Source: Octopus bimaculoides (Eukaryota). Taken from it: DNA of 54,020 nt. Within the stretch, counting starts at the first letter, position 1; every line of letters begins with the position of its first letter. The stretch spans positions 26,520,274 to 26,574,293 of the forward strand of contig NC_068999.1 of NCBI RefSeq assembly GCF_001194135.2. The letters run 5' to 3'. Of this stretch, positions 19,301 through 48,979 are shown piece by piece. The translations under genes were made by a program, and so were the position numbers. Under the pieces are notes generated by a model. The model worked only from the letters and a program-made list of their open reading frames with translations. It was not told where the DNA came from and did not search any database.

Positions 19301-22300
19301 AATGTTAAAATAAAATATAAGAATAAATGTAAGAATCTACAAACAGAAGTAGTACAAACCTCTTCCATGGTAAAAGCGATTGTGTATTGCAGGGCTGTAT
19401 GGACAATTTGGTTAACACAATTATACAAAGTGCCACCACTAATGTTGTTAGGAAGGTATAAAATGTGGGGATGACCAATCAATTGCTGTTGTTCAGGATT
19501 TGATTTACTTAGACATCGGAAAGTCAGTGGCACAGCTAAGATTCTAAGAGAAAAATATAGAAAAATATACAGATTATGCTTACACTACATATGGTCATGT
19601 AGTCTCTCATAATAGAACCTGTTCCAATGGTCATCATGCAGTAACAAAGAGTAAGCTTTTATCTTTTTAAAGTTCTAAATAATGTCATATGAATAACGAA
19701 TTAGATGACAGAAAATTAAGGGCCATGAGTTGACTAAATATATGAACACTTAACTAAATGATGAAATTGATAGTCTAAAAGTGAGACTAACTTTTAGTAT
19801 TTTTGTGAATAGCTTATTGCAGAATAGTGCTCCTGACTTCACTCTAACATCATTAATACCATCATTTTATGCCTGCTGTGTATTCAAGCATAAGCCGGAT
19901 GGTTTGACAGAATCTAATGAGAAAGAAGACCATGTTTTGCTCCAACAATTTATGGTGTTCACTTGGCATCCAGCCCTTCCTATTACCAACCTGTTACTTT
20001 ACAGAGTGTACTGGGTGCTTTTTCATGGCACCAGCATAAGTTACAATTAATGTGCAAAACTAAGAAACACCTCCATGACCTGAGAAAGAAAATTAGAGAG
20101 AGAGGGTGGAGACTAGCCAGGTGTTAAGAAGTTAAAGTATGCTGGGAGGAGCAGGTTTCTTGTGAAAAGATACTAATGGGGAAGCTCAGAGAAAGAGCAG
20201 TGTCAGTGGTTTGTGAGGGCAAGTCAGAGAATATTAATAAGGGCTGTGGGATAGGCTAAATAGGAGATTCATAGCTACTCTGTGTTATATGTTGGTGTAT
20301 TGATGCTAGAGAGAGATAAAGAAGGTGTTGAGGAACCAGAGTATATCCTCAAGTCCAAGATGATGAATAGAAGAGTGCATGGTGACAGAAGGATCAGGTC
20401 AGGTGGGTAAAGATTACAAGAAAGTGTAGGAGGTGAAGGTAGTTTGGTGAATGAGGGTCAATAGTATGAATTATTGTTATCAATGGGAAGTGACTCGAGG
20501 CAGAGGAAGTGATGATTGGCAGTACAGAAAGGGTGATATGTATGGTAACATATATGTCGATTTACATTTTTATTATTTAGTGGCTTGGTAGAATTATTAG
20601 AGTATCAAATAAAATGATATGTGGTGTTTAGTCATGACCCTTTATATTCACAGTTCAAGTTCTGCCAAAGTTAACTATCTTTCATCCTTCTGGTTTCAAG
20701 TATAATTAACTATACCCATCAACAATACACTTGTAGTGAGTCAAGGCAGTTCTATTTGGTTGTCATGTATGAGCACTATTAGTACTATGGCAACTTCAGC
20801 CAATTAAAGCTGGCTGCAGATTAATACAAACAGCAGCTTCCGCCCAGCAGTATTTCGCACCGTTTTTTCAATATTTAGCTAGCAGTTAGCAGGAAACTTT
20901 GACAAGTGTGCAGCTATTTTCAGTGGGACTTTGGAAGGACACTACCCCTGATGGCATACTTCAACATGAACAGCTATGTCACTTCACCAACTTAACACAA
21001 TAAACTTCAGGATAACATTAAGCTTGCTTGTCAAATCCAATTATTCTCTATTGATGGAACTTGCCTGTTTAACCTTCTTACTACCTTTATCGTGGTATGC
21101 TTCTACCCATTTGTATAAATATTAAGTCCATTGGCCTTCCTTGACTCCTACATACAATTGCCTACTCTCATTGCAACCCAAATAAATTATGTTTGTTCTG
21201 ATTTATTTGTTGTTTTTCCTCAATGCTTCACAGATGCAACTCTTTTATTGACTTTCCACGTTGTGTATTTATTTGGTAACACACTAAAATTAGTAGCACT
21301 TTACTCAAGTTACATTTGAGCACCAAAACTACTCCATTACATTGGTGACTGATGTGATGTTGGAATATTTCTTTGGGAAATGGGAGATATTCCCCCACTA
21401 AAAAAAATTAATATAATTATGCTCATGAAACAAACACTTTAAAACTACATTTCCTGCATTCTGCTTCATTTGAACTATGTGTGTACATTTAACTGTTTCC
21501 AAGATGGCTACCCATCTTCATGTGTAGCCTTGGGCCAGAGTCAGATGTGCATGCCTCACCCCACTTAGATTTAATTTTTCCTGCTTCCTGCCTTTGGACA
21601 CAACATTGAAGACGATAGCCTTTGATTTTTACAAACACTGCAACTATTGAGGACCTGCCTCCAACTTCTTTTTGATGGCCGCACCATTTTCTTGGCTTAA
21701 TTTTTTCAATGTTCCATCCTTCACTGCCCTGGACTTTCACCTTAACTCACTGAGTTTCACCAGCTCTGCTTCCTGAAGATGATTCTGGCTTGTTTGCACC
21801 TGATTAACTGTTTTATTTTTCGTGGCTGAGATGTACTCACCTTACAGCATTCCTCCTTTCTCCCTGTGTCTCTGATGCAAAGCTATGGTTTGTGGTATTG
21901 CATCAGACACAGCAATCGCTGCTGTATTTCTACTGTTTTTCAGCCATTCTATTAATGATTTCAGGCATCGTGCCTCCTTTGAACTCTTGTGTATAGACTG
22001 CAACTTTTCTTTACATTTCAGTTATTTTTTCGCTTTTCAGGACTAAGACACTTTCGAGCCACGTTTGTCATTCTTGCTTTACATTGTTTCATTTTTCAAT
22101 GTTCATACACACGTTTGCATGCCTGCACAATATGTTATGCTTTCACCAGTTGCTATCCCATGTTCTCTGAGCCCTTGTAAAACACAACTTGCTTCTATTA
22201 GACCTCAGGTTGGTCATGTACTTAATAGAGTTACCTGTCTCTCGCAACATGCCAGCACACCACACTTGTGCTTTTGCTCATCTCTCAAGGCATTTCATAC

Positions 22301-25300
22301 TGAATGCAATCCTGCAAGAAAATTTTCACTGATATTGATTGAGAATACATGCACTCACTTGCCGCAGCTGCCACTTACTCACACTTATTTATACAACCTC
22401 AAGCACACTGCCTCAGTCACGCAATGACTAGCAAATTCCGCACTCACACTGCCTCAGTCACGCAATGACTAGCAAATTCCGCACTCACACTGCCTCAGTC
22501 ATAATGACTGCACACTGTGCACGCAAAGCGACACTGCTATTCAAACTCACCTGAATAGATCCTGTTCTGTAAACATTCCCTGGATTATCTCTCCTGATAT
22601 GCACAATTTTTCTCAGCCTTGCATCACATTCATCAACACAAATACTTCCCACAATCCTGAGTGTTGTTTTTCACTTTCCTGAAATGTCTATTTGCATGCT
22701 TGTTTTGTTTTTCTTGATGCATTCATGTTTTCTTTTTCCAGTGTTTGAACATTTGGTGGCTCTTCATGTATGCAATGTAATTTCCTTTTGCCATTGTTTG
22801 ACAATTTTGCTTTTCTTGCTGTATTAATATATCAACATGCAGTCTGAAGAGGGGTTATGTAGTGAGTCAAGGCAGTTCTATTTGGTTGTCGGGTATTGGC
22901 ACAGTAGTGCTATGACAACTTCAGTCAATTAAAGCTGGCTGTGGTTTAATACAAACAGCAGCTTCTACCCAGCAGTATTTCATACCTTTTTTCAATAGTT
23001 AACTGGCAGTTAGCAGAAGACTCCAACAAGTGTGCAGCTATTTTCAGTGGGACTTTGGAAGGACACTACCCCTGATGGCATACTTCAACATGAACAGCTA
23101 TGTCACTTCACCAACTTAACACAGTAAACTTCAGGATAACATTAAGCTTGCTTGTCAAATCCAATTATTCTCTATTGATGGAACTTGCCTGTTTAACCTT
23201 CTTACTACCTTTATCGTGGTATGCTTCTACCCATTTGTATAAATATTAAGTCCATTGGCCTTCCTTGACTCCAACATACAATTGCCTACTCTCATTGCAA
23301 CCCAAATAAATTATGTTTGTTCTGATTTATTTGTTGTTTTTCCTCAATGCTTCACAGATGCAACTCTTTTATTGAATTTCCACGTCGTGTATTTATTTGG
23401 TAACACACTAAAATTGGTAACACTTTACTCAAGTTACATTCTTACATAGTTACATTCAAACACCAAAACTACTCCATTACTCACTAAAAGCTAATGTTTT
23501 TAGTGTGTTGTTGTGTGTAGGATTGGCAACTGAGTTGACACTCCAAATGTTTAGATGTGTCTCACAGGGTGTGTATTTGAAGATAAAAGGTAACACCTTT
23601 CTCTGGCAAAAAGTAGACCCATAAACATTGTATTGTAAAACATTTGAATTAAACTGATTATACAATTTTAAGATGCTTTAAAAATTAGAGTTTTAATTTT
23701 GGGTTAAAAAATAGAAAACAATTGCATGATATTGTAAACAACACAAGATTTATTCTCAAAAACCAATTAACCTTTCCTGAAGCTGGCCAGTATCAAGTCA
23801 GTAAGTTATTGATTAAGCATTGCATATGAAAGTTTTTAGGAAAGTGTTATAATCAAGTTACAAAAAATCCCCCTCTAGAACAGAAAATTTTTTATACAGA
23901 ACTTAAACTGAACATTCTAAATTTTTAAATTGGTACTTAACTAGTGGGACATTTTGTTGACTACAAAAGTTACCATATATTCAAATGACTGATATTAAAA
24001 CAATATTACAATAAAATGAGAAATTTCATAATTGTGAAGCAAAATGCAAAACATTTCTACAATTCTCCAAGGTGGTGCCCCAGCACGGTCACAATCTAAT
24101 AACTGAAACAAGTAAAAGATAAAGTACCAACTATAATTTTAAATTGTGACTTCTATTAAATTATTGAAATACAAAAAGAGATAACTAGACAACAGATCTT
24201 TCTACTACCACTAACATGTCACTGTCATATAATGTCTTCTGTTATGCTTGCAGGAGTTGGATGGGTTTACCAGCACTNNNNNNNNNNNNNNNNNNNNNNN
24301 NNNNNNNNNNNNNNNNNNNNNNNNNNNNNNNNNNNNNNNNNNNNNNNNNNNNNNNNNNNNNNNNNNNNNNNNNNNNNNNNNNNNNNNNNNNNNNNNNNNN
24401 NNNNNNNNNNNNNNNNNNNNNNNNNNNNNNNNNNNNNNNNNNNNNNNNNNNNNNNNNNNNNNNNNNNNNNNNNNNNNNNNNNNNNNNNNNNNNNNNNNNN
24501 NNNNNNNNNNNNNNNNNNNNNNNNNNNNNNNNNNNNNNNNNNNNNNNNNNNNNNNNNNNNNNNNNNNNNNNNNNNNNNNNNNNNNNNNNNNNNNNNNNNN
24601 NNNNNNNNNNNNNNNNNNNNNNNNNNNNNNNNNNNNNNNNNNNNNNNNNNNNNNNNNNTCATATAATGTCTTCTGTTATGCTTGCAGGAGTTGGATGGGT
24701 TTACCAGCACTGCATCTCACCAATTGTTAAATTCCTTTGAAGTTTAGTCACCATTTCTTTACAAACTTTCCTTATTCTTCATCTACTGAAAGCCCCTTCT
24801 GTTTGGATTGCTTGCCACTTCTTTATCCAAATGTCATCCAACATATGCATTTCTTGTCCACAGCAGTGCAGTTTTCACTTTTGTATATTACTTGTTATTC
24901 TTTTTGTACTGAGTTTTTCACTCAATACATTTGTGCTCCATCATTCACACACACTAACATTATACACCCAAGAAGCAGGCTTACATTTCTTTCAAATCAC
25001 TGCACACACCCAGCATTCAATGTTCATGTTTTTCTATCATGCAACATTGCACTTCATATACAAGCATTATACAATCAGCCTTTCTCTTAGGAAGAAAATC
25101 TATTTGTTGCCAGCATAGGTAACAGCTTCTTTCCGAACTTTTTTTTACCTATTCTTAATCTGGTTTCTACACTTTCTAAACATCCTCCTCCATTGATAAT
25201 TAGGTCAGCTAAGGAGCAGAAGCTAACATATTTCTAGAAAGCCTCTGAGCATTTGAAAGAATATATTTCATTAGTGCTCTTATTTATTAGTACTGTGCAT

Positions 25301-28300
25301 TTGTTAAATATGAAGTTTTTCTGTCAGCTTGCCTGTAATTCCAATGTACCTGTTGTGTAACTATAGTGTATATTAGGTACACCATATGCAATTCTTACCT
25401 ATTCCTTTTCTTCATATTGCATCTGGCTATTTCCAAGATGGCAGCAGAGTCCTAGCTTCTTTCTTTTTTAACTAAAAACATTTTCTCAGTTTTACTTTTA
25501 CAACTTGATTCTAGGCTTTGTTTCTATGTATAAAATTTTTTTCTGTGATTCTGTGACAGATTCATTAATAAGAACTAAGTTATAGCCAGACTCAACCCCT
25601 TCTGTTAGAGAATAATAATAAAGAGGGGATTGAAACTGAATCTTGATGAACACCTATCTGTATGCTAAATTCTTCATGAAACTCATTGCCAACTCTCACC
25701 TTGCTGACAACACCTTTACCTCTGTACTAGGCTTGCATGACTCTCACAAACCATTCATCTACCAAGTTTTATTTGTAATCAACAGATTACAGAGGGTGGA
25801 ATATTAAAAGCCTTCTTCAGGTCAATAAATACTAAGTACAGTGGCTTTGATTTTTCTATTTGAAAGCCATTAAACTAGCTTTGAAATTTATATTATTTTC
25901 TTGTGCATCATTCTCCTTTTTGTAGTTAATATCTTCAACATAAAAGAAAAAGGATGAAATAAGCACAATTACCTTGTTCTTAACCTTTTGCTGTCTGGAT
26001 CAGCCAATGGGACAAATTCCACAGAAGGATTTACGAAAGCAAGACACACCTAGAAAATAGTACAAACAAAATACAGACAAAAGAAGAACTTTCTAAAGTG
26101 TTATTTAATATATCAAGAAATGTAAAAAACATTACATATAAAAAAAAAACTACTTACAGGGCAAGTATAAGAGAAAACACTATGGTGTTTCAGTGACATC
26201 TGCAATAATACAAAAAAAAATATATAAATAAACTAAAATACATCAAAATTTATAAGTAAATCTGAAAGTTATGGAATAAAATGAGTAATCAAATACCTAA
26301 AGTATAAAGTTTGATCTTTGTTCAAAATATACATATTGTTATTCATAAAAGCATTGTGAACAGGTCATAACCTAAAAGGCCCCAATTACAACTATCAAAA
26401 AGTGTGCTGATGTAACCAATAAAAACTTGAAACTGAAAATGATTAGAAAATATACTTGCAACAGGCTGTCACATGCTTATATTTCTTACCTTGGTATCCT
26501 GACACTCTTTTCTCTCCCTCTCTCTATCTACATACATGCACTGTTTTGTATAATATACTCTTGGCTTTTCAAATCACATCTATTTCTAAAACAGGTGTTA
26601 ATCCTTGACTTAAATTTTAATTCAATAATCAACTGGATCAAAGGATGACTGAACTCATGCTCTTGGAGAAAGAATACTTTATACACATGTATACACACAC
26701 ACACACATACACATATCATCATTTTATGTATTTTCCATGCTGGCATGTGTTGGGGGGGTGTGACAAGATCTGACAGGTCAAAACCATGTTTCTGAGGCTG
26801 GTGGATGCCCATCTTAACAATAACCACTTCACAAGGTATTAGGTGCCCCTTTTTCACGGTACCACCAATAGAGGTAGTCTTACCCTTAGCAAAATTAAAA
26901 AGCACCTTCAAAAGCCCTACATTGTCAATGCTCAATTTGATTTATCAACCACTTACAGAGTGTACAAGGGTTTTTTTTCTGTACACCAACACTAGGCTTG
27001 CAAGGTGACAAAGAGACCCCATGACTGAAAGAGAAGATGTTAAAATATGATGAGAAGCAGATATAGTGTGGTGAGAGGAATGATAATGGAGAGAGCAACT
27101 GAGGATACTGTGTTCAACTGAAGGAGACAAAGCAAAAGTAACGCAAAGAGTAATGTCAGGAATTAGTGTAAAAGAGAGAGGGGGAGATGTTATATACCCT
27201 CATTTTATGCCCACTTTCTCCATACCTGCACAATTTGGACAGCATCAAAATCCGACAGTTATACAGGTTGAGTGTTGAGAGGGTGGGATAGAGGGAACTG
27301 ATAGAAACAGCAAGTGTGATGAAAGAGGGTAATAGCAAAGAAAGGGAAAGCAGTGTTGGTGTGTGTGTGTATGAGAGAGTGTGTGTGTGTTATAGTGATA
27401 AAGATGGTGAGATAGAGGTTTAATGAAGTAGTGATGTAGAGCTACTCTATGTTATATATGACCGGTGTATGAGAAGAGGTAAGTTAACATAACCAAGAGA
27501 ACATAGTAAGAGAAGAATCAGGGAGGGTGAGTAGAGGTTACCTCCCAACCCAAGCATCACAATTCAAGATAGAGGAATGAGTAGCAAGATATAGGTGGTA
27601 GTGGGGGTAGAGGGTACTCAATAAGCACAACTTGAGTGCTTTCCTCTGAAGTACTTGTGGTATGGTATGGTGAGTAGAAGTCATGCTAAGGAGATGAGAG
27701 AGTATTGAATAGATAATGGTCAGAGAGGTGATAGTGCACCATTCCACTATCTTAACCAATATTTTGCTAAGGTTATGCAAGAAGCCGAGTCTCATGCAGT
27801 ACCATGTGTTACCAGTTGACAGTTGTTAATAGTTTTTTTCCTACTGCAGTTTTTATGGTGGAAGGAAGACTGGAAGCAACGAGATGATGTCATGTAAGCA
27901 AGTGAGAAGAAAAGTTTTCTCCTGCATTTGGTTTTTCCTGGGGACGTGAGCAGTGACACGCCAGTCATGAAAATAGAGAGGTCGTGACAACATGGGTGAA
28001 GAATTGATCAATCTGCCGGCAGTATCCGATTGCCAGTCGAAGCAAGAACAATTTTATTTATGTGCCTTCAAACCACAAGCTATTTTGGCACATTGTTACC
28101 AGCTGTGGGGGTACGTCCGAGAAGTAGACATTTTATTTTTTGTTGTTGTTGTTCTTGTTCTTTGTAATTGCCACAAAAATCAGAATTGGAACCGGGGAAG
28201 GTGATATGGTGGCCTGGATAAAGAAGGTAAGATTAGTGGCGGATCTGCAGGGAATAAAAAAATGTGGTAAACCTTATGCTGTTGTATTTAGAAGGCAATG

Positions 28301-29966
28301 CATTGAATCTCAAGTTGGAGATGGATGAGGTGAACCAAGAGAGAGCAGAAAAAAATTGAACAGCAGCTGAAGGACATGTACACAGAGGGGACTTTTAAAG
28401 CCTACAGCAAGCTCAGGAAGGTTAGATGGACTGGCGAGCAGATAGATAATTATGTGAGTGAGATTGGTGGGTCTAGCAAGGTTTACTGGAGCAGCAATGG
28501 AGCGGATGGTGAAGCTGGCTTTTGTGACTGGTTTCCTTGACCATATCTTTGTATGTCTGCAGCAGATGCCGGACATCAAAATGATGTCGGTAGGAGAGAT
28601 GATTGATAAATTACATGTATTGATGCAACAGTGACGAAGAGGCGGGTAGTAAACAACGAAAGCAAGAGTCTGGTGAGGCGAATGATCAAGGGACCATGTT
28701 TCAGATGTCAAGGTCCGCACATGGTCAGGGAGTGCACGGAACCAAAGCCAATGGTTGTGTGCTTCCAATGCGGCCACCCTGGGCACATAGCAAAAAATTG
28801 CAAGCAGGGAAATGAAAGAAGGGGACTACTGCGCTGCTAGTTCCCTCCACTATCAATTATTATAATAATAATCCTACCATAACAATTCTGAGCGGCGGGA
28901 CTAGTAATAATTCTTTTAAGCATCAGTACCAAATAGAAGTGCATAATTCTAAAAACAAAATTATCTGTCCTTTAGAAAATTAGTGTTTAAGGAAAAATAT
29001 AGTGTAACAATGTAAGGTAATAACAGGGAATCATAAGGATTATTACATAGGTTTGCCTGCTACAATTTGAAAATCTAGATTTCATAATAATTCTCATTTA
29101 TTTAAGTATAGAAGAAAAGGTAATTCTACAAATCTTAGTAAATGCATTTGGGATTTAAAAAGGTAGGAACATTAAGTATGATTTAAAATGGTCCGGTATC
29201 AATTATGCACCATCATAAAATACTGTAATTCAAAATGTGATCTTTGCCTTGAGGAAATGTATTATATAATAACTTCTAAATTAATATTAAATTACAATGG
29301 TAATTTTACATTGAAATGTTATCACAAATTTAGAAAAGCATTTAAATATTTCAATTCGTAATTTCATATAATGTAATAAGCATAATTTTTCTTAAAATGA
29401 TTGGCATATTCAATAGATAAAAAACTAATTGTTGTGTCATAGAATCTCTATATTTCTAATTGTTGTAACATAGAATTCATGTTTATTTTTTATTCTTTTG
29501 CTATTCACTTATGTCATCAAAAGTTGAATATCAAACTAGCTTCTCTTAGGATATTTCTTCCTAATGTTCTTTTTGTATGTGTTTGTCTACTAGAGATATT
29601 TTCTTAGTTCACTTTGAATTTAACCAATTTGGGACTGCCTTGATAACCTTGTGTTAATATAGATTTTCAGATATATCACTCTGACTGATATTTTCTGTAT
29701 CTAAATATGTTGATACAATTGAAATGATCGTCAGTATTGTATAGTTGAATCACCAATTAAAGATGTGATTTTCTCCATTCTTATACTCTGAATTTCTTGA
29801 AATTCTTGTAAATGATATTTGGATCTACTTATCATACATGAGGATTTACCATGGATGTTTATTCTTCTTGCATTTATTGGTGCCTGATTGTTTGACTTAG
29901 TTAACCTAATTTGTTTAATACAGAGCTTTATTGATATTTGCCTGGAATTTTTAATCCCTTTCACTT

Positions 29967-30010
<44 letters not shown>

Positions 30011-30973
30011 CTTCATCCTCTGACACAAGTTCTCTTCCTCAAATGTCCTGTCCCTCTCATAATTCCTCATCTTGTGAGTTACTTGGTTACCCTGCCTGTG
30101 TTAGTGCCACATAAAAAGCACTGAGTCCACTCTGTGGAGTGGTTGGTTTTAGGAAGGGCATCCAGCCATAAAATCCCTGTCAAACAGACACAGTAGCCTA
30201 GGGTAGATTTTCTACTTGGCAAGCTCCCATCAACCACCCTACCCATGTATGGAAGATGGATGTTAAACAATGATGATGATAATATATAATAATCAATTAA
30301 GGAAACAAAAGATGGATTTGATATTAGTCTTTATTTTGTACAACGATTGTTTTGGCCAATCCTGTGACAGTCTTTTATGGGTGGGATGATGTGCATCATA
30401 TTGTGTTGCATCAGTTTTATCATCTGGGTCATGTCAAATATAAACATGCATGCCTGAACTCAATATTTTTAGCAAGACACCACTTTATGTATGCATGTAC
30501 CTGATGTGACCCAGGCTGCAAAATTGATGCAACACAATATGATGCATATCATCCTCCCATAAAGGACACTTGCAGGATGGGTTGATAGAATAAAGATTAA
30601 TACCAAATCTATCTTCAGTTTCCTTAATTGATTATCTCAACTAACCATGCGGAATTCCTGAAGTAGATCCAAGGGAAATATACTCCAACTGCGGATGACA
30701 CCAGGCAGTCCAAACCGTGCTAGTGCTTTACTCAACACATCAAAATATTGACAAATACCCATTAATCCAAAAATTACACACACACATATCTGAACCACTG
30801 AAATCTACAAGTTTTTTTTATTCTCTCTCTTTATTTTCTCTTAATCCTTTCTGTTGAGAAGCATAGGCTCAAAACATAAAAGACCTTTTCATTTTCCTGA
30901 GCATCAAACTAATACACTTGCTTGTTGTTCATATAACTGTGTGTATGTATGTATGTACGTGTGTGTGTGTGTG

Positions 30974-31005
<32 letters not shown>

Positions 31006-32636
31006 TACATACATACATACATACACACAGACACACATGCATAAATATACATGTGTAAAATATGTCAGAATTTGAACAAGTTTGGTGACACTGCTTTTTT
31101 TAGTAGTTAAATGTTTAAATTTTTTTAGGTGTGTATGTTGTCATTGGGATGCCTAAGCAGGTTGGTAAGACATCATGTGGTGTTGGTGTGTATAATACAT
31201 ACATTGTTTTGGTTCTGTGTATAAAGTAGAAATTATGTTAAAATACTGCTGAGTTACTACTGCCCTTCCTGAACAAAAAATACATTCAATCACAATGTTC
31301 TTTCACACAAAATCTCATACTGCTGTCAGCCAAGTTGAGGTATGGCTGAAGACAAATTGAAGAATAGAAGAAAAAGATGTAATGACATGCTCCAGCAAAT
31401 GGTAAAATAGAAGTTTGTGAAAAACATATCTATTCTATGAAATAGCTGTATGAGAACATTTACTTACTTCAAGACAACTATGACAAAAAGTGCCACTGCA
31501 AGATGTGTGCACCATCAAACTTGTATCAAGTAATTCCTCCAAACAGATGGCACAAGATCGCCAGTGTTCAGCAATGGATGATAAATTAGCAGAGGGTGCA
31601 GACTCCCAACTCATTGGAATGGCTGGCCTTTTGGAATTATCTGTTGTCAAAGACCAATCCCATATTTGGTCAGTCTGCATAGAGTCTGGATCAGGATCAT
31701 TAGTTTTGGACTGAGTTGTAACTGATGAAGAATCACAAACACAAGCATCATCTGTCACGATTGAATCAGGGAATGCAGAGGTAGACATGTTTGTTGTTAA
31801 TGTAGACTGGCTCTGAGGAGTTAATACAGGATCCAAAGATGGCCGTGATAATAGTGGAAGGTTACTACTATCATTTGACTGTGGAGTTACATCAGATTCT
31901 GTTGTGCTCATTGATGTTGTCTTCTGTGGTGAACAGTTACTGGGGCAGAAAGTATCCATATTTGAAAAAATGTCAGGAGATTTTGAAGAACTAGTTTGTT
32001 TGGTGGCAATGCTTTCTTTAGTAGCTAAACTGGAGTTAGCTGTTGGCAGCTTTCCTAAATTGTCTGATGGGGAACTGTCCAGTGAATTTGGAGGAACAGC
32101 CATTTGAAAGGCATAAATTTTTCGAGCAGAATCATTGACAAACCGGAGCAATATATTGTCATCCTAAAAAGAAAATGATCAAAAGAGAACTATATGAAAT
32201 GCTGATGAAGCAGTAGTAGTATTAGTTATCCTTTCTGCTATAGACACAAAGCCTGGAATCCTGGGGAGGGGCTAGTCAATTACATCAACTTCAGTGTGCA
32301 ATGGGTACTTATTTTATCAACCCTGAAAGAAAGGCAAAGCTGATCTCAGTGGAATTTCAATGCAGAACTTAAAGACAGATGAAATGCTGCTAAGCATTTT
32401 GTCCAGTGTGCTTATGATTATGCTAGCTCGCCACCATAATAGTAGTAGTAATCTTTTCTACTATAGGCACAAGACCTCAAATTTTAAGGGAAGGAGCTAG
32501 TTGATTATACTGATCTCAATGCTTATCAACCCTGAAAGGATGAGAGGCAAAATTGACCTCAGCAGAATTTGAACGCAGAACGTAAAGACAGACGAAATGC
32601 CGCTAAACATTTTGTCTGGAATGCTAATGAGTAGTA

Positions 32637-32672
<36 letters not shown>

Positions 32673-35600
32673 GTTTCTGATATTGTTAGAAAACAAACTA
32701 TATCTGATACATATTTTATAGACCCTGCAGAAATAACAAGTGAACTATAGCGTAAACTGTAAAAGGAAAAGAAAAAAACCTTGACTCCACATAGCAATAA
32801 TGATGTCAAGAATGATATTAACAGATCCGAGGTCAAGACATGCAACCTTGGATCATATGGACAGTTTACTAAAGTCATAAAGCATTGATCTCCACAAGAT
32901 ACCTAACTGATAACATATATGGTATGGAAAATAAACAACAATAAAACAAATTGGTCAAATTTGCAAAAGCCATCTCATCAATGCTAGGGTGATTGAATGG
33001 ATACAAAAATATAAAAGGTCTAATATTGTGAACTGGAACATTCAGATTCAACTGTAAGGAATGCAGTGGTATTCAAATGATAAAGCGTGAAGCATAAACT
33101 CTTTGGTTGATAGTCTGGCACCCGATTAATGTATTAAGCTGTGATTCTCATAAAAGATTATATATGAAAAATGTAAATTGTGGTGGTTTAAAGAAGGTCC
33201 ATAAATTTATAATTAGTGTTAGTCAAGGAAGACAGTAAAGATGATAAAAATACTATTGTTACAATGGGAAAAGCTTGACCTTTCAACTTTTGGCTATCCT
33301 AAATGTATTAAAATTCTCCAAATGGTTAAGTAGAGTAAAACAGATGGAGAGCTATATAGGATCATTCAAGTGAAATTCAACAAGGGTCCATCGTGAAGTT
33401 TCTTAGATTTTCTTCAAATTTACACTATTAGTTAATGACAATGGGAGGAGTAATTCCTGAAAATTTCAGCTCCATAGTCAGATTTTATGGTCATTTAAAG
33501 TTTTAGGAAATTTCCAAAATAATGAATTTATTTTATTTTTAGGAGCCCATCATTCTAAATAGGTTTGATACCATAAGCAAGCAAATAACTTTTGATTTAT
33601 TTTGTTTTTTACTGTTGCATGTTATTTCTGTTTTTTTATTTTGCTAGTTTTAATTTTTTTTCAATTTTTGAGGGAAAAATACAGTCTAAGAAACCTTTTA
33701 TAATTGTCTTAACTATCAATATGAGACTAGTAGAATTTTTGACCCCATGAATCTATAAAGGTATTATAAAAGGATGAGGTTCTATTTTCTGATCACATTT
33801 TTGTTGCTGTATAGTCAAGAGGTCATTGTCCAAGGATTTTTAGGTTTGAAAGTTTTCCTAATTGTTGCATATTGATTTCTGGGGCTCTGAACTACTCATA
33901 AAAATGGAAATTTCTATTTTCAGGGGATGAAAATTGATATTTAGAGTAGTTTTAAATGCTGTATTTTTACATTTCTATACTCACCATTAGGTGTATTTTC
34001 AGAGTATATATAGTTTTCACTTTATTGATAAGTTAGTCTGATTAAAAAAAAAAAAAAACCCTCAATTTTCAAACTTTTTCACAGAACCTTGTTAAATTTC
34101 ACTGGAATGACCCAAATATTTCCATCAGATTGGCTGGGAAAATACACAAAAATAACGAATGACAATATCAAGGATAAAAACAATAATACATGATCAATTA
34201 AAAAGCATTATGAAAGCTCTTTGACTTACAAGGACTCGTGAAATGTAATTGTTAACTACTTCAACCATGATGATATCACAGTTTTGCTGGCCTGCCATCT
34301 TTCGCAGTTCAGTTTTGGCTTTATAAATGTTGTCATTTTTGTGCAGTTTTAAGAGATACCGTATGGGCGGAATAGTACGGGTTTGTGTAATAAATATAAC
34401 ACCTGAAAAACATAATTTCAGCCAAGTCTTAGACAAATTTCTGAACATGCACATGGATAATAGAGAATAAAGAGCACCGATTCAAGACAAACAATCTAAA
34501 AAGACTAGAGTGAGTTATGAGAAATATTATTCTAGTTTCTTGCTGTCATCTTGATTTTATAATATGGTATGAACTCAATGACATAAATTAAGAAAACACT
34601 AAGGCACTTCACTCAACTGTTTGTCCTCCATATACATCTCATATTTATATTAGCTCAATCTACAACTCAAGCATACTACAAAATTCTTCTTACACCCAAT
34701 TTTCTACAGTTTATTTGTGCATTAACAATACACATCCAATAGGTACACAGAATTTCTTTTCAGCTGTCATGCATCCCCTGCCCTTTGCTTTTAATGTCTA
34801 TGTTTTGTTATCATGCAGCATTGCACTTCATATGCATGTGTCATACAATCTATCCTTCACATGGAGTAATAATTCCTTTATTTCTAGGAGAGTTAAGAGT
34901 TTCCTGAACTTTTTCAGGCTTATGCTTTTTAACACCCACCTCCATTGCTACTTAAGTTACCTCAGTAAAAGAAACTATTGTAGCGAACTCATAAGAGGCG
35001 GAGAGAGAACATAGGTTCGTTTGCCCGAACAGGAGAAATTGTTGATTTCTCATTGGTTAAAAATTACTGCCCATATACAAATTCTAAACTTTCATTAAAG
35101 AAATCTTTCATGAAGTACGGTTCTTAGAATTCGTGTATGAGCAGTTATAAAAACCCTGATTTTTGGGAAACTCTCCAGTGATTGTTGGGTTGTCAATCAA
35201 ATCCATAACACTCACCCTCTTGAGTATTGGCTAATCTTTATGCCATGTTCAATACTCAAACCTAATAAGATTGAATTGTTGTGAACTCTAGTAGTTAGTA
35301 TGAAAGATTAGTTAGTGTGAATTTTAAGTTGTAAACATTAAAAATAAGATACAGTATTCGTCCCCGACCGTCACACTATCAACTACTTCTCGGGAGTCTT
35401 CCAAGCATTTCAAACAATTTATTATATGGATACTCTTATAGCTAACCACTCCTGCACCCCATAGTTTACATTGAGTAAACCATATATAATTCCTACGGAC
35501 TACTTTCCTGCATACTGATAATGGCTGCTTTCCAGATGGCAGTTGAGTCCTGTTTTCTTTTCTACTCCTTAAAAGTTCCATCTTTATGAGGTTTACTTGT

Positions 35601-38600
35601 AGACCTTTTGGTTCTAATTTTACTTCCATGTTTCCAATTAAAAAAAAAAATTTTTGACAGAGAACTAAGTCAACAACATACAGAAGCTCTGACAGACTGC
35701 TGGTTTCAAACTCATTTGTTATTGCCTGGAGGATGCTGAGATTTGAATTCTGATAGACATCTATCTGCACACTAAACTCTTTGCTGAATTTGTTGCTAAC
35801 TCTTACCATGCTATTGTAATTATTTATATAATTTAAACTCAGCAGTGTATATTGACCTTCATCCCATGCCCAAAACTTTTCTATTCACTACCCATCTAAT
35901 CTAAAAGAAATAAACTGTATATAAAAGAATATCTTTAAAAAGTCGAAGATGGCTGGAAAGTCTAAATGTAATTATGACAAACATCAGTGAGATGGTAAAC
36001 AGTTTGTCAGAATCTGCATTGATACTAAACTGAGACTGCAATACAAACGTTCTGTCTTGAAGTGATCCAACTTAAAACTTACTATCAAAATTTTGTATTA
36101 ATTTACGTTTCAAGCACAGGATTAATAATGATAGTTACTTTACTAAATTCTTCATTATTTTCAAAATTAATTGAAACAAAGGCAGTATTTTCAACAGAAA
36201 TATGCAACAAAAGGGTTCAACACCCAGCAGTTATTTTCACTACATTTGTGTCTAAAAATTTTAGGCAAAATATAAACATTTATTGTCCCATCTCCCATTA
36301 ATCTTGATATGTAGCAGTAAAGAAGAATAAAAGACCACTTTAGGGTACCATCACTGAAATACCATGACATATTCAAAATAGATAGCTAAATCTATGTTGT
36401 GATTATGTACATAGGATTTTTGATTACTGACTGATGGTTCTAATTACACCAGCAGAACTGCATAATGTTTCTGACAAAAATAGCTTTCAGTGGATACATT
36501 TTACAAAGATGTAAATAAGTCACTTACGAATTTGATGTTAGGAAAAGATCATTCTGGTTTTGATAAAGAACAAATGTTAGCCAGTACTGTAACAGTTCAA
36601 AAGAGCAGTAATAAATTCTAATGCTTTTAAAAGATAAAACAAGAAAATTAAGTTATGTAAACTCACAGAGTTGGCGTTCCATAGCATGAGGTATTGGTAC
36701 TGACAAATACATAAAAGGCTCATAAGTTACAGATACATGGCAACACTCAGAGCAGATCACCTGAAGTTTAGAGACATCGGATTAAAGAAAACATTTTACT
36801 ACATATATAACTGTGCAATTTAATATAAGAAATTATAATTTTCAATAAAATTGCTAAGATTAACTTTACCATTTATCAATTTGGTATTGATAAATTATGA
36901 GCAGTAGTGTTCTAATGTTAATTCAGTCAACTATAATCCACCATTGTAAAAGTTGGCTTTGCGTTTAGTCCAAAGAACAAGTATTTTAAGGTTTATCTGG
37001 CCAGATTGGTACCATTATTCCCAGTTTCTCAGGTTGGAGCGAATAGTTTCTTAAGTATGAAATAGTTTTATCAAGACCTAAGTATCATACTGAAGTTGCT
37101 GTGACACATTATTAGGTTCATTTGCTGAACAGTTAAAGGGTTTAATTACGAAACCTAGGGTTATAGTTCAAAAACTCATGCACATATTTATGTATATGAA
37201 TAATATAAAACACAATCATACAATGACTTAAGAAGGAAAAATTGTAAAAATCAAGTAGCATAGGTAACTATGAATTTATTTCAACCAGGGTCCTCACAAT
37301 ATGAAAAATAATTTGAAACCAAATTCCTAATTTGGTAAATTTTAAAGGTTTTTGTTTCTTTTAAATAATTCAGAGTTATGAATTTCTTTGAGACATCCAA
37401 GCAGAATGTTCCACTGCTGGAAGCAGATTTAAAGCATTCCCAGTTATGTGAACCAGAGCTTAGGAAGGATTTGAACAGGGAGAGCCTAATAGACAACTTA
37501 CGGTTCATAACTCTGCTAAACATGGATTTGAAGATTTTGGTGAAGTTGGTAAACATGCTGGCGTTTGTTGTCAGTCATGTACAAACTTTGCAATTACTGT
37601 CAAATCTATCACAACCTCCACTTCATATGGTACATTGTAGAATAGATTTGGAATAGGTCTAGCTTCAATAGGGCATTGATTATTTTGGATACATCAAAAG
37701 CTTATGTCAGAAGAAGCCATCATTGCTTAGTGGTTGTCCTACTACAATTTATAGTGGAATCTGTATGACTGTCCAACTACCTCTTGGTAGTTTCATACGA
37801 TGCATCAAGAATATCACCGCTTTTTTCTTTCATATGCTTTTGGACTGGAGCCATTTTCATGTGACACATCTTTCTGCAGCTTAATGCCAAGTATGCACTG
37901 CATTCTACCAGCTAGACAATGTGACAGTGAAAAGTGAACAATTGCACTTCATAAAGTTAAGAGGAGGACACGAGCAATGATAGTCTGGGATTGATTAGGG
38001 TATTGAAGAAAACAATCTGAGCAGTCTCTTTTGGAAGACTTTCAGATTGGGGATTATAGATAATTTCCAAAAGTTCTCAGCCTGGTAGTGCTACAAGGGA
38101 ACATTGCTTACTTGGGATATAAGCTCTACATTTACTGAAGCTACAGTGGTGAAACCTTTATGAGATGAATGTAATTTTCAGTTACTGTGAATTACTGACA
38201 TGTAGGTTTGTATTGAACAACTACTGTGACAAGGTATATATGTGTGTGAAGATAGGTCTTGCTGCCTTTCTTTGACAAAAAAAAAAGAAGTTATTTTTCC
38301 TCTATTTGATGGCTATGGCATGGAAGACACAGATAGAAAGGTTGAGGACTAGGCTCTTCCTCTTTGGTTAAATTCTCATCAAGTACTGCTTGAAGAGGAA
38401 AACACCCCTTAGTTGTGTATTTCATGTAAGGTGGGTGACAGCAGTTGGGTGATGGAGCTAAATTGGTCTACCCTGATAATGTGACTGTAAAGGACAGCTG
38501 GGAGAGGGCACTTTGTGAGCTTGATGTGGTAGAGTAATCTTGGACTTTGGTGGGTTTCGTCTCAAATTACACAATGTTCTCTCAAACAATGGGGAAGCCC

Positions 38601-41600
38601 TTTTCGTTAAAATTTTGTTACCTAACACTTTTTATTGATTTTGCCTTCTTTTTACTAGATCTAAAAGCTTGTTATTCTTCTTTAGAGTCTTCAATATTTT
38701 TGGCCCTTGTGACCAATAAGGGAAACAATAATAATCACCATTACCATTTACTATTATTACTGTGTTCTCTTTAGCCCTTTAGCATTCAGATTACTCTGTC
38801 AAGTGTCCTGTTCATTTATTCACATCATTTTGAATAAATCATGCACTATCTCATAGCTTTGAGAGCTCGCTGATGTGATTGTTTAGTTTTGGAATGACAC
38901 TGTAGGGTTGGCATGAGAGGATAGATCTGGCCAGTTTGAACATAAAACAGGTAGAATATTTTGGCCAGATTTGGCTGGTTTAAATGCTAAAGGGTTAACT
39001 TTTCAATTTAAAACACTGCCTAGTTTTCTTCTGCTAAGTATGTAGGTAGCTTGATAGCCTTACTTCAGTAATATAACTGATTACACATTTGCAATAATGA
39101 TATATTCCATCACTCCATCAAATTTTAAAATAGAAAGTAAAAATTTGATAAAATGGTAACTTTAAGAGAAGTACTTACAGTATTTTTGAATTGTCCATGG
39201 AATGTACTGACCACAATACTGTTATTCTTGACTAAATGGCTTTCCCAAGAAACATTAGCAGCATCTATATCAGCAGCAGTGAGGCCTTCTTTCAGCCTGC
39301 AATGTTCTGCTAGTGGTAAATTTCTGTTGATTTCATTAGAACTTTGATGTTTACTAGCCTGCTTTTCTTCCAGCCACTCAGAATCCTGTCTTTCTATGAC
39401 TGACTCGTCTCCTCCACTCATTGCTTCTTCTTCTTCATCATCCTCATCTCGCTCCTCTTCCTCTTCCTCTTCATCATCATCCTCTAAAGTCACAGAGCAG
39501 CTTGGTGTAGTCATTACTTCGTCACTTCTCAATGTGCTTTGTTCCAAGTTAAACTTTTGAAGAGCTTGCCTCTTCATGTTTTTCTCATCAACATCTGACT
39601 CTATTTTGATTCTTTTTATATTGTTAATATTAGACCAATCTTCATAGGGAAGTCCTGATGTGCAAGGGTAGTTTTGGTGACACCTTGTTTTCTTATCAAG
39701 TCTAATATTAATGTCTTTTAGCTTTTCTATGCCAGGGGCAAGCTCAGCTTTAGCAGCCTCAGCTCCAATGATTTGTTCTATATTGTTATCACAATTTTCA
39801 GGATTTCTCCGAATTCGATTATCAGATTTTATAAACTTTTCTGAATCAGTCTTGATTTGTTCCTCAGATTCTGAAGCTAGCATATTAGTATTGAGAGTTT
39901 TTGTTTCTTTGGCATAGAAATCCTCCAGACTTGGTAGACATTTGAGACCAAGGGCTAGTGTTGTGGTTGACTCTCCACTACCATTAACATGAGTGCTGTC
40001 GACAAAAGATTGATCATTAAATTGCACAGCAGTTGGTTGAGAGCAAGGTTGTATTAAAGATTGGTTGTTACTTGCAAAATTGATTGCCCTTCTGTTGATG
40101 ACAGTTGCTTCTTCACTGCTACTATTGGCAGCACAACACAATGGCTGTGTTGAGGAGCTAACACGACTTTCAACTGTAAGCATTTTATTAGTGTCTTTGT
40201 TAGGAGACCTTTCAAAGTTGCGTAATGGAGAGATTTGCGCTTTACCTTTGTCAGTACCGAGCTCACTACAAACAGAGGTTACCTCAGTACTGCAACTACT
40301 AGCTACTAGTTCTTGTTCGTGACTAGTATTACTGTGGTTGATGGTTAGTGAAGCTGAGTTAGTATTGTTACTTTCAGTGTACAACTGGTTTTCAGTGAAA
40401 TGAAATGGTTTCTTCAGGCTGCTATTACAGTTTTGATAAATGATAGTGTTACCCATGGACAGTTTTGTTGGGTTTTTTGATAATGAATTGCACTCAGTTG
40501 TTCGATGTATATCTATCTGAGAACTTGATACATGGCTGTTGTTTTGGTTTTGAAGCTGTAATCCTGATGACAATACTTTAGTTCCTTCAGCAGTACTTTG
40601 ACATGATGAAGACACTGTTGAAGAAAAAGATGAGAGGGCTACTACACTTGATGTAACGGCATCATCAACAAGTGGATAGCCTTGTGTTTTAATAAAATCA
40701 GAGGTAGGCAGTGGATTTTGAAAAATATTCCTGTTGTTACAGCATACATTATTTAGTGATTCATGGAGATTATCTAAAAGCAATGTAACAAATTCTTGGC
40801 AGTCGTGCTGAAATAGAAAGAAAACCAAAACTTCATTAGTTAACACAAAATATAAAAATTAACAGAAGCATATTGATGATATTCCATAAACAATAAGGAA
40901 ATTTAGCTCATTGGGTCTCAAGAAGCACTTTTTCCCCTTTATCATAGACAATGTTATACTTTGGGTTTGTCATTTCATTAAAGCTTTCACATAAATATTT
41001 TGTATGCTTTACAGACATAACATTAATTCATCAACCACACTTCATTATAGACAGATAAATAACCTCAAGATGTTATATATGTGTACATCAGTGTTTCTCT
41101 CTCTCTCCTCCCACTACATATAAGAAATATTTTAATTTGATGATTCCATTGTTGGTGCATCGTAGTAACAGAGTGTTCAATGCATGGGATAAAATTGAAT
41201 TTATTTTGATAATACTGGTATTTCCTAGTATATTTTGCATGCATACTCTTAGAATTCATTATTATTGTTGTTATGGTTCTGCTTCGTGCATCAATCATTG
41301 TGTTACTGTAATGTAAAGATATCATAAAAAATATGCAGTGAATAGTATCAATTAAGCTTCTATGAAGAAAAAACCCCAAAAAACAAAAACACATAAAAGC
41401 CTTTCTTCCCACCAAAAACGAAGAAAAACAAACATACAAGATTGAATGAATATAGCAGTTTTCACATTTTTCACAGTTGTTCTCAGAAAGCATCTTCACA
41501 ATTGATTAATGAATGGGAAAAAGTTGGTAGATTAACAGGTTCTCAATATGGAACAGCTCAAACCACACATTCTGTTCCTTACAGATTATAATACAGAAAA

Positions 41601-42166
41601 TATCAGAAACCCATGGGTCTGAGGTAAAACTCAGATTCAATTTAATATTAATAATGGTATTTCCTAGTACATATTCTTACATTGTTCATTTTTCTATGCT
41701 AGCATGGGTTAAATGTATATATTATTGAGGTATTGTTTTACAGCTGGATACGTTTCTGTTCCAAACCCTTACTGGTTTTTCAAATAAGGGATCTCTTATT
41801 TTACATGTCTTCAAAGTTACAGAGCAAGTGGAAGATTTGTTGAGAAAAGTAAGGACAATATCTCTCATAGGGACAGTCTTCCAGAGTGTGTAACATTTGC
41901 ACAAGGTACAGTTTATTGGGAATGGACCTGAAATCATATGGTTGGGAAGCAAACTTTTTAACCACACAGCCAAGTCAGCACCTTACACATATATCTAAAA
42001 TCACACAGACGCACAAGGACATGCATACACATCATTAATGAGTTCATTTCCTAACCACACAGTTCCAAGATCAATTTTGCTGCTTGCCACCATAGGCAAG
42101 TGCCTTCTACTGTGAAGTCAGTATGACCATTACATTGTGAATGAAATTTGGTACGTACATGTGGGT

Positions 42167-42229
<63 letters not shown>

Positions 42230-47524: not shown

Positions 47525-47557
<33 letters not shown>

Positions 47558-47813: not shown

Positions 47814-47851
<38 letters not shown>

Positions 47852-47854
47852 TTA

Positions 47855-48925: not shown

Positions 48926-48979
<54 letters not shown>

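What the first reader, a model, noticed from the sequence alone, without database searches (positions are those of the whole stretch)
26044..31554. RING-like zinc finger embedded inside a deubiquitinase catalytic domain (candidate DUB/E3 hybrid)
Seen: splicing exons 7+8+9 gives CAICLEELLDTSLMVHTSCSGTFCHSCLE|MSLKHHSVFSYTCP|VC, i.e. C-x2-C-x11-H-x2-C-x4-C-x2-C-x14-C-x2-C. It lies between the two halves of the USP finger Zn ribbon (CSEC in exon 5, CPNC in exon 12), after the internal UBL. It keeps RING hallmarks (CxIC-L-E in loop 1, CPxC in loop 2). The ligand order is atypical (C2HC5, with His at position 3 and Gly where RING-HC has His), there is no Trp in the helix, and Leu sits at the linchpin position. 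Established: USP4/11/15/32 carry UBL or disordered inserts here and USP19 carries a MYND finger; I know of no human USP with a RING in the catalytic domain. Inference: a lineage-specific ubiquitin-editing enzyme, or a repurposed RING used for binding. The domain is invisible in the ORF track because it is split over 5.5 kb.
Basis: partly seen in the sequence, partly recalled or inferred. Interest (0 to 1): 0.85.

Follow-up and report, generated by a model that had tools for sequence, protein, structure and literature searches.

The report
RING finger inside a deubiquitinase
A cephalopod gene encodes a ubiquitin-removing enzyme whose catalytic domain carries a built-in RING finger, the module that normally adds ubiquitin; the arrangement is real, conserved from sponges to amphioxus, not seen in vertebrates here, and I found no study of it.

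Summary
A 16-exon minus-strand gene (47046..13075, all GT-AG, 1447 aa) encodes a USP deubiquitinase. Three of its exons (31554-31468, 26199-26158, 26049-26044) splice into C-x2-C-x11-H-x2-C-x4-C-x2-C-x14-C-x2-C, exactly as described.

Two cephalopod orthologues contain the same junction peptides. The isolated motif passes Pfam zf-RING_2 (32.4 bits against a cut-off of 27.3). AlphaFold2 folds it confidently (core pLDDT 94-98). All 50 best PDB fold matches are RING or U-box E3 domains. The closest solved RING by sequence is RNF4.

All eight proposed ligands are conserved in 117-119 of 121 homologues. These come from sponges, cnidarians, molluscs, brachiopods, nemerteans, arthropods, echinoderms, hemichordates, amphioxus and tunicates. 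No named hit is a vertebrate. So "lineage-specific" is wrong: this is an ancient metazoan family.

The catalytic Cys/His/Asp triad is intact. The E2-contact Ile and Pro are near-invariant, but the linchpin position varies (Leu here).

Best reading: an active USP with an E2-recruiting RING in cis, that is, a DUB/E3 hybrid. E3 activity is inferred, not shown. Open-access literature searches found no description of the architecture. In most orthologues the RING scores below Pfam's threshold.

The parts
46938..47046 (-). Exon 1; start codon at 47046, with an in-frame TAA directly upstream
   Evidence: aligns with the N-terminus of Argonauta P0129
46662..46736 (-). Exon 2 (small, phase 1-1)
   Evidence: found through P0129 by tblastn; AG/GT sites
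45922..45978 (-). Exon 3 (small, phase 1-1)
43791..44062 (-). Exon 4: USP Cys box, GNTCFMN at 44021-44001 (catalytic Cys, residue 98)
   Evidence: (Cys in 112/121)
39179..40807 (-). Exon 5: QHDCQEF motif, then about 500 aa of poorly conserved Ser/Asn/acidic insert, then the start of the fingers
   Evidence: 36% identity to cuttlefish across the insert
36667..36760 (-). Exon 6: first half of the USP finger zinc ribbon (CSEC, 36754-36743)
   Evidence: (119-120/121 Cys)
34230..34402 (-). Exon 7: internal UBL (first part)
   Evidence: weak USP7_C2 hits at the equivalent place in orthologues
31468..32163 (-). Exon 8: end of the UBL, Ser/Thr-rich linker, and RING ligands 1-6 (CAICLEELLDTSLMVHTSCSGTFCHSCLE, 31554-31468)
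26158..26199 (-). Exon 9 (42 nt): RING helix end/loop 2 and ligand 7 (MSLKHHSVFSYTCP)
25973..26049 (-). Exon 10: RING ligand 8 (VC, Cys codon 26046-26044), Leu at the linchpin position, conserved FVPL flank
19360..19543 (-). Exon 11: first half of the post-RING beta-grasp (UBL-like) domain
19028..19260 (-). Exon 12: second half of the beta-grasp domain, with the C4 knuckle CSRCPSVNQCVGC (19251-19213); return to the USP core
   Evidence: the three Cys columns counted are Cys in 115/121; all four invariant in a 33-sequence subset
18230..18346 (-). Exon 13: second half of the USP finger zinc ribbon (CPNC, 18315-18304)
17241..17386 (-). Exon 14: USP palm
17000..17143 (-). Exon 15: His box (GHYTCY) and catalytic Asp (NDENVS)
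   Evidence: His 109/121, Asp 110/121
13075..13370 (-). Exon 16: C-terminal tail and stop codon
   Evidence: C-terminus EPDSTYDFYS identical in Argonauta P0129

Best explanation
**Shown.** The gene encodes a catalytically competent USP-family deubiquitinase. Its core is most like USP4/11/15, but it has no DUSP domain. The catalytic domain is split by a long insertion made of a UBL, a disordered Ser/Thr-rich linker, a RING finger, and a second beta-grasp domain carrying a C4 zinc knuckle.

The RING is a cross-brace domain with an unusual ligand set. Site 1 is C1007, C1010, C1030 and C1033. Site 2 is H1022, C1025, C1048 and C1051. An invariant His three residues upstream of ligand 4 replaces the canonical His/Cys that normally lies two residues downstream of it.

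**Inferred.** The RING docks a ubiquitin-charged E2 through the conserved CxIC Ile and CPxC Pro. One polypeptide can therefore both add and remove ubiquitin. This would let it edit chains on a bound substrate, or act as a ligase that strips its own autoubiquitination. The two flanking UBL-type domains or the USP ubiquitin-binding site may supply what the missing linchpin residue normally contributes.
For: - **Gene model.** It is validated end to end by two cephalopod orthologues.
- **USP core.** Pfam UCH scores 207 bits. The best PDB matches are the USP15, USP4 and USP11 cores at E about 1e-80. Catalytic Cys, His and Asp, and both CxxC pairs of the finger ribbon, are conserved.
- **RING by sequence.** Pfam zf-RING_2 scores 32.4 bits against a cut-off of 27.3 on the isolated domain. 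Of 43 family members, 27 hit zf-RING_2, and every family hit is RING-type. A profile search of PDB puts RNF4 first (8.6e-14 for a tandem construct, 1.7e-7 for a single RING), then TRIM32, RING1B and BRCA1.
- **RING by fold.** AF2 gives pLDDT 87 overall and 94-98 in the core, with beta-beta-alpha topology. All 50 top Foldseek PDB matches are RING or U-box E3 domains, with rmsd about 2-3 A over 50-64 columns for nearly all of them.
- **Conservation.** The eight ligands are conserved in 117-119 of 121 sequences, Ile after C1 in 116/121 and Pro after C7 in 115/121. This holds across Porifera, Cnidaria, Protostomia and Deuterostomia, so purifying selection has been strong and long-lasting.
Against: - No biochemical data exist.
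- The residue after C8, which is the linchpin Arg/Lys in most activating RINGs, is Leu here. Across the family it is S 37, N 23, R 16, L 11, G 10, a pattern typical of non-activating partner RINGs.
- The conserved Pro is also present in inactive RINGs, so it does not discriminate.
- Foldseek E-values are modest (9e-3 at best) because the domain is small.
- AF2 gave no information on how the RING sits relative to the catalytic cleft. pTM was 0.65 for the RING plus beta-grasp construct.
- In full-length proteins the Pfam RING score falls just below threshold (26.5 bits).
Confidence: 0.45

Rival explanations
1. The RING is a non-catalytic module. It would serve for heterodimerisation with another RING E3 (as in BARD1, BMI1 or MDMX), for substrate or adaptor binding, or for intramolecular regulation of the USP. 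It might bind an E2 or ubiquitin without promoting transfer, as OTUB1 does with E2s. The protein would then be only a regulated deubiquitinase.
For: The linchpin position is not conserved and is Leu in the window. The ligand geometry is non-canonical (C2HC5, x4 between ligands 4 and 5). The top fold matches include the RING1B/BMI1 heterodimer pair. USP4-type inserts are known from the literature to regulate catalysis rather than add a new activity (my own knowledge of Luna-Vargas et al. 2011; not re-read here).
Against: The closest sequence relatives among solved RINGs are active E3s: RNF4, TRIM32, RING1B and BRCA1. Ile after C1 is near-invariant (116/121), whereas, from memory and not checked here, inactive partner RINGs do not keep an Ile there. 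Asn or Arg occupies the linchpin site in 39/121 members.
Confidence: 0.4
2. The RING has become a purely structural zinc scaffold that stabilises the large insertion, or a zinc or redox sensor. It would have no partner-binding role.
For: The protein carries four predicted zinc sites: the USP ribbon, two in the RING, and the C4 knuckle. Zinc modules inside USP inserts such as the USP19 MYND have no established catalytic role (PMC9133600 describes only the architecture).
Against: Surface positions that are not needed for folding are also near-invariant over more than 600 My: Ile, Leu-Glu after C2, and Pro.
Confidence: 0.1
3. Artefact: the three pieces do not belong to one mRNA. They could be a chance motif, a nested gene, or a mis-assembly around the N gap.
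For: There is no RNA-seq for this species. An assembly gap lies at 24278-24658, in the intron after the RING exons.
Against: Splice sites are canonical and phases are compatible. The same junction peptides occur in two other cephalopods, and the same contiguous motif occurs in about 117 orthologues, including an intronless transcript-like contig. Orthologues run directly from ...KRLRTR into ILAVP..., so nothing is missing in the gap.
Confidence: 0.02

Closest known systems
USP4 / USP11 / USP15 (DUSP-UBL USPs)
   Same: They give the best catalytic-core matches in PDB (E 1e-76 to 1e-81). Their catalytic domain is split at the same place by a UBL plus a disordered insert. The finger zinc ribbon is retained.
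   Different: The window protein has no N-terminal DUSP-UBL: only about 85 aa precede the Cys box, and Pfam finds no DUSP. Its insert additionally holds a RING and a second beta-grasp domain with a C4 knuckle.
USP19 (CS domains; USP domain containing a UBL and a MYND zinc finger)
   Same: It is the only well-known USP with a zinc finger inside the USP domain next to a UBL (architecture as described in PMC9133600).
   Different: Its finger is MYND, not RING. The window protein has no CS/p23 domains and no MYND hit. A comparison with a USP19 sequence recalled from memory showed only core similarity and no match of the RING plus beta-grasp profile. That sequence is unverified, so this is a lead only. 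Orthology was not established.
RNF4 and TRIM32 RING domains (RING-HC E3 ligases)
   Same: They are the closest solved RINGs by profile. They share the CxIC-[LM]-[DE] loop 1, the helix CxxCLxxSL, the CPxC loop 2, and the beta-beta-alpha cross-brace fold.
   Different: The canonical fourth ligand (His in RNF4) aligns to a variable column, which is Gly here. An invariant upstream His takes its place. There is no linchpin Arg, no RNF4-type C-terminal dimerisation tail, and the RING is embedded in a protease domain.
A20/TNFAIP3-type ubiquitin-editing enzymes (functional analogy)
   Same: One polypeptide combines a deubiquitinase domain with a zinc-finger ligase element. This is the model for the proposed mechanism (my own knowledge).
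   Different: A20 is an OTU protease with an A20-type zinc finger placed C-terminal to the protease, not a RING inside a USP fold. There is no homology.

Membership tests
USP (peptidase C19) deubiquitinases | Cys box with the catalytic Cys (GNTC[FY]MN) | tested here: met
   GNTCFMN at residues 95-101; Cys in 112/121 homologues
USP (peptidase C19) deubiquitinases | His box with catalytic His, plus Asp/Asn | tested here: met
   GHYTCY and NDENVS are present and conserved
USP (peptidase C19) deubiquitinases | Profile match above the curated threshold | tested here: met
   Pfam UCH 207 bits against a cut-off of 23.9
USP (peptidase C19) deubiquitinases | Isopeptidase activity on ubiquitin | not testable with these tools
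   needs Ub-AMC or diubiquitin assays
RING finger (cross-brace zinc domain) | Eight zinc ligands with the canonical spacing C-x2-C-x9-39-C-x1-3-H-x2-3-C-x2-C-x4-48-C-x2-C | tested here: inconclusive
   Eight conserved ligands are present, but the order is C2HC5 and there are 4 residues between ligands 4 and 5. The canonical ligand-4 column is variable.
RING finger (cross-brace zinc domain) | Profile match above the curated threshold | tested here: met
   zf-RING_2 scores 32.4-32.8 bits against 27.3 on the isolated domain. It scores 26.5 bits, just below threshold, in the full-length protein.
RING finger (cross-brace zinc domain) | Beta-beta-alpha cross-brace fold | tested here: met
   AF2 core pLDDT 94-98. 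All 50 top Foldseek PDB matches are RING or U-box E3 domains. This is a prediction only, and no zinc was modelled.
Activating RING E3 ligases | E2-contact hydrophobic residue in loop 1 and Pro in loop 2 | tested here: met
   Ile 116/121 and Pro 115/121
Activating RING E3 ligases | Linchpin Arg/Lys (or Asn) after the last ligand | tested here: not met
   Leu in the window; the family has S 37, N 23, R 16, L 11, G 10
Activating RING E3 ligases | E2-dependent ubiquitin transfer | not testable with these tools
   needs E2-panel autoubiquitination or discharge assays
USP4/11/15 subfamily | N-terminal DUSP-UBL module | tested here: not met
   No DUSP hit at E<=0.1 (run on the 14-exon 1403-aa model; the 44 residues added in the 16-exon model were not scanned). 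The protein starts about 85 aa before the Cys box, with an in-frame stop upstream of the ATG.
USP19 | CS/p23 domains and a MYND finger | tested here: not met
   No CS or zf-MYND hit
RBR (RING-between-RING) ligases | IBR and RING2/Rcat domains after RING1 | tested here: not met
   No IBR hit. The domain after the RING is a beta-grasp with one C4 knuckle.

The most novel reading that the evidence does not exclude
An ancient family of bifunctional enzymes, present from sponges to invertebrate chordates and absent from vertebrates, in which a RING ligase module is wired into the catalytic domain of a USP deubiquitinase. E2~Ub recruited by the RING and the USP ubiquitin-binding and active site would then work on the same substrate, as a natural single-chain ubiquitin editor. 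It would use an unconventional way of activating E2~Ub without a linchpin, possibly through the flanking UBL-type domains.
Probability: 0.35. Interest if true: 0.8.

Novelty: new variant of a known kind. Interest (0 to 1): 0.62.

Why it matters
Deubiquitinases and RING ligases are usually separate proteins that find each other in complexes. A covalent fusion kept for the whole history of animals would show that coupling the two activities in cis is selectively valuable.

It would also offer a compact natural system for studying ubiquitin editing, ligase self-protection, or E2 regulation of a DUB. None of the hits whose names I could see is a vertebrate, and none of them is a fly or a nematode. 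That distribution, together with a RING that mostly scores below Pfam's threshold, probably explains why the family has escaped study.

Genetically tractable species do carry the gene. Seen here were Nasonia, the ascidian Phallusia, amphioxus, sea stars and sea urchins, and jellyfish.

For the genome scan, the finding shows that a small domain split over three exons and 5.5 kb can be recovered by reading splice junctions.

Tried and rejected
- **RING-only protein search.** No candidate shared enough 5-mers, so it was uninformative. The composite core query then worked.
- **Third word-indexed search, with the RING alignment A1.** It returned only three weak short hits and did not even re-find the family. 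A wasted search.
- **AF2 on the window's own RING plus beta-grasp sequence.** The cuttlefish orthologue (76% identical over this region) was modelled instead.
- **Special relationship with USP19 (MYND replacing the RING).** Tested only with a USP19 sequence recalled from memory. It showed core similarity only, and the RING plus beta-grasp profile scored about 0. Treated as a dead lead, not as a test.
- **RBR ligase idea.** Rejected: there is no IBR, and the downstream domain is a beta-grasp.
- **PHD, FYVE or another treble-clef fold.** Rejected: Pfam PHD E=0.68, and the fold matches are all RING or U-box.
- **Nested gene, or a missing exon in the N gap.** Rejected by phase continuity and the orthologue peptides.
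- **Literature.** Eight searches were run. The seven aimed at the architecture, and two evolutionary surveys of DUBs and the ubiquitin toolkit (PMC5381560, PMC4327156), gave no description of a USP with a RING. Only open-access full text was searched.


Full report
**1. What is in the sequence.**

On the minus strand, 31554..31468 reads CAICLEELLDTSLMVHTSCSGTFCHSCLE and ends at a gtaagt donor. A 42-nt exon at 26199..26158 is flanked by ...tgcag and gtaagt, and reads MSLKHHSVFSYTCP. The next exon starts at 26049 after ...ttctag, with VCLAFVNPSVEFVPLADPDSKRLRTR.

The coordinates 26044-31554 run from the C1 codon to the C8 codon.

**2. The gene.**

I first built a 14-exon model. After comparison with an octopod orthologue I refined it to 16 exons. 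It spans 47046..13075, every intron is GT-AG, all phases are compatible, and it encodes 1447 aa with one terminal stop. An in-frame TAA lies directly upstream of the ATG.

tblastn of the cuttlefish protein P0001 (Acanthosepion pharaonis) recovers the catalytic and insert exons at my boundaries. tblastn of the Argonauta hians protein P0129 recovers every exon. P0129 aligns with the 14-exon model from the first to the last residue (MP..MDIE... to ...EPDSTYDFYS).

Both proteins contain the junction peptides ...CLE|MSLKHHSVFSYTCP|VCLAF.NPSVEFVPLADP.SKRLRTR|ILAVP.... Nothing is therefore missing in the assembly gap at 24278-24658 in the following intron.

A bivalve orthologue (P0003) is one uninterrupted 3.58-kb ORF on a 4.1-kb Logan contig. 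This looks like an mRNA assembly with the RING contiguous. No RNA data for the source species were available.

**3. Domain anatomy.**

| Feature | Evidence |
|---|---|
| USP catalytic core | Pfam UCH 207 bits; no DUSP, CS, MYND or IBR hit |
| Closest solved cores | USP15, USP4, USP11 at E 1e-76 to 1e-81, aligning in two blocks either side of the insertion |
| Catalytic and ribbon residues | Catalytic Cys, His, Asp and the CSEC...CPNC finger ribbon present and conserved |

Between CSEC and CPNC the order is as follows:

- a UBL (exon 7 and the start of exon 8);
- about 180 aa of Ser/Thr-rich linker;
- the RING;
- about 140 aa that AF2 models confidently (pLDDT 87 for the cuttlefish RING plus this domain), which Foldseek matches to beta-grasp/UBL domains: TBCE UBL, USP7 UBLs, and USP15/USP11/USP4 DUSP-UBL.

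This second beta-grasp domain carries a C4 knuckle, CSRC-x5-C-x-GC. The three Cys columns I counted in the 121-sequence alignment are Cys in 115/121. All four are invariant in the 33-sequence subset.

A separate, poorly conserved insert of about 500 aa sits in exon 5.

**4. Is it a RING?**

*Sequence.* The isolated region hits Pfam zf-RING_2 at E=1.1e-7, 32.4 bits against a gathering score of 27.3, and every other hit is RING-type. Of 43 diverse family members, 27 hit zf-RING_2 at E<=1e-3, and all families hit are RING-type. A family profile searched against PDB sequences puts RNF4 first (8.6e-14 for a tandem construct, 1.7e-7 for a single RING). TRIM32, RING1B, TRIM5/2, RNF13 and BRCA1 follow.

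*Fold.* AF2 on a 43-sequence alignment gives mean pLDDT 87, 94-98 in the core, with beta-beta-alpha topology. All 50 best Foldseek matches in PDB are RING or U-box E3 domains, with probability about 1 for most. Nearly all have rmsd about 2-3 A over 50-64 columns. E-values are modest (best 9e-3), as expected for a 50-residue domain.

**5. Ligands.**

In a 121-sequence alignment the eight proposed ligands are conserved as follows (1447-aa numbering):

| Ligand | C1007 | C1010 | H1022 | C1025 | C1030 | C1033 | C1048 | C1051 |
|---|---|---|---|---|---|---|---|---|
| Conserved in | 118 | 119 | 119 | 117 | 119 | 118 | 118 | 119 |

The column that aligns with the canonical fourth ligand (His in RNF4) is variable: C 62, F 25, G 13, A 9. 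It is Gly in the window.

The invariant upstream His is therefore the likely fourth member of site 2, together with C1025, C1048 and C1051. Zinc was not modelled, so the assignment is an inference from conservation.

**6. Distribution.**

The composite-core search found 243 homologues at E<=1e-10. Of the 120 listed, 85 carry the contiguous motif under a generic RING pattern. In the alignment of all 120, about 117 carry it.

Named sources are listed below:

- Cephalopods: Acanthosepion, Argonauta.
- Gastropods: Haliotis, Aplysia, Elysia, Biomphalaria.
- Bivalves: Mytilus, Ruditapes, Tegillarca, Mya, Argopecten, unionids.
- A brachiopod (Lingula) and a nemertean (Lineus).
- Many insect orders, collembolans, crustaceans, spiders, ticks, mites and pycnogonids.
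- Echinoderms: Patiria, Diadema, Antedon.
- Hemichordates (Glandiceps), amphioxus and an ascidian (Phallusia).
- Jellyfish: Rhopilema, and a second medusozoan-like record, P0100.
- Sponges: Corticium, Sycon.

An exhaustive profile search of 1.84 billion representatives gave 110 hits at E<=1e-10. About 65 of the 150 listed hits cover the whole RING-plus-flank profile. The rest are short generic RING proteins that match only the finger.

No vertebrate, dipteran or nematode name appeared among the names I could see. This suggests loss but does not prove it. Nearly all records are called "uncharacterized protein" or carry inconsistent automatic USP names.

**7. Why it was overlooked.**

In full-length proteins the RING usually scores below Pfam's threshold. 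It scores 26.5 bits in the window protein and 16.9-25.1 bits in five of the seven orthologues scanned, with no RING hit at E<=0.01 in the other two. Only 4 of the 120 listed homologues carry a precomputed RING annotation.

Seven literature searches aimed at the architecture, and two surveys of DUB and ubiquitin-toolkit evolution, gave no description of a USP containing a RING. The search covers only open-access full text.

**8. Mechanism.**

*Shown.* The protein has an intact USP triad and a conserved RING fold.

*Inferred.* The positions that contact E2s in characterised RINGs are near-invariant: Ile after C1 (116/121), Pro after C7 (115/121), and the Leu-Glu after C2 (nearly invariant in the 43-sequence subset). 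Since the RING itself does not need these for folding, I favour E2 binding. From that follows a cis-coupled ligase/deubiquitinase, acting either as a chain editor or as a self-deubiquitinating ligase.

*Against.* The linchpin position after C8 is Leu here and varies across the family (S 37, N 23, R 16, L 11, G 10). That pattern is seen in non-activating partner RINGs. The main rival is therefore a binding or regulatory RING. I put it at 0.40, against 0.45 for the hybrid.

I could not determine how the RING sits relative to the catalytic cleft.

**9. Comparison with known systems.**

- **USP4/11/15.** The catalytic core is USP4/11/15-like, but the defining DUSP-UBL module is absent, so it is not a member of that subfamily.
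- **USP19.** This is the known USP with a zinc finger beside a UBL inside the USP domain (PMC9133600). Its finger is a MYND and it has CS domains. A comparison with a USP19 sequence recalled from memory gave only core similarity, which is a lead and not a test.
- **RNF4/TRIM32.** The RING is closest to these but deviates in ligand 4 and in the linchpin.
- **A20.** This is a functional analogy only.

**10. Verdict.**

There is a RING inside a USP, and it is plausibly a DUB/E3 hybrid. It is wrong on one point, because the family is not lineage-specific.

The window's gene is one member of an ancient family that is visible in databases but apparently undescribed. I rate it a new variant of a known kind, of moderate to high interest.

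Noticed in passing
window 19543-19360 and 19260-19028 (-); knuckle 19251-19213: Directly after the RING lies a second conserved domain. AF2 and Foldseek place it with beta-grasp/UBL folds. It carries a C4 zinc knuckle, CSRC-x5-C-x-GC: Cys in 115/121 at the three columns counted, and all four invariant in a 33-sequence subset. The sponge Corticium lacks the knuckle.
   Followed up: partly
window 46736-46662 and 45978-45922 (-): Two small phase 1-1 exons lie between the start-codon exon and the Cys-box exon. They were found only by comparison with the Argonauta orthologue. Skipping both would keep the reading frame, so they could be cassette exons.
   Followed up: partly
window 40807-39179 (-): One 1629-nt exon holds about 500 aa of Ser/Asn-rich and poly-acidic, poorly conserved sequence (36% identity to cuttlefish). 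It is inserted between the QHDCQEF motif and the fingers, making a second large insertion in the catalytic domain.
   Followed up: no
window 883-2663 (-), 7363-8125 (-), 8839-9848 (-), 52241-52768 (+): Transposon debris flanks the gene. There are reverse-transcriptase-like ORFs with a YADD motif, and two Tc1/mariner-like transposase ORFs with DDNAP/NDNAP motifs. I judged these by eye and did not search them.
   Followed up: no
window 5425-6199, 14142-14717, 24278-24658, 52029-52203: Four assembly gaps (runs of N). The third lies in the 6.4-kb intron right after the RING exons. Orthologue continuity shows that no coding exon is lost there.
   Followed up: yes
orthologues P0005, P0024, P0035, P0104, P0109, P0127, P0129: In full-length orthologues the RING scores below Pfam's gathering threshold, or is not reported at all. 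Only 4 of 120 homologues carry a precomputed RING annotation. This probably explains why the architecture is not described.
   Followed up: yes
proteins P0148, P0149, P0151, P0154, P0161, P0165, P0170, P0183, P0188, P0231 (Logan/ENA, no names): A sub-branch of the family has CVICMED...QHNAC.C..C...IKCPGC, with Gly instead of Val/Ile in the last CPxC pair. It comes from unnamed assemblies, so the taxon is unknown.
   Followed up: no
window 26528-31140, 42054-42250, 47485-47892 and 48845-49248: There are many CA/TG-type microsatellites. They read as THTHTH or CVCVCV in translation, and some lie in the 5.3-kb intron that splits the RING.
   Followed up: no
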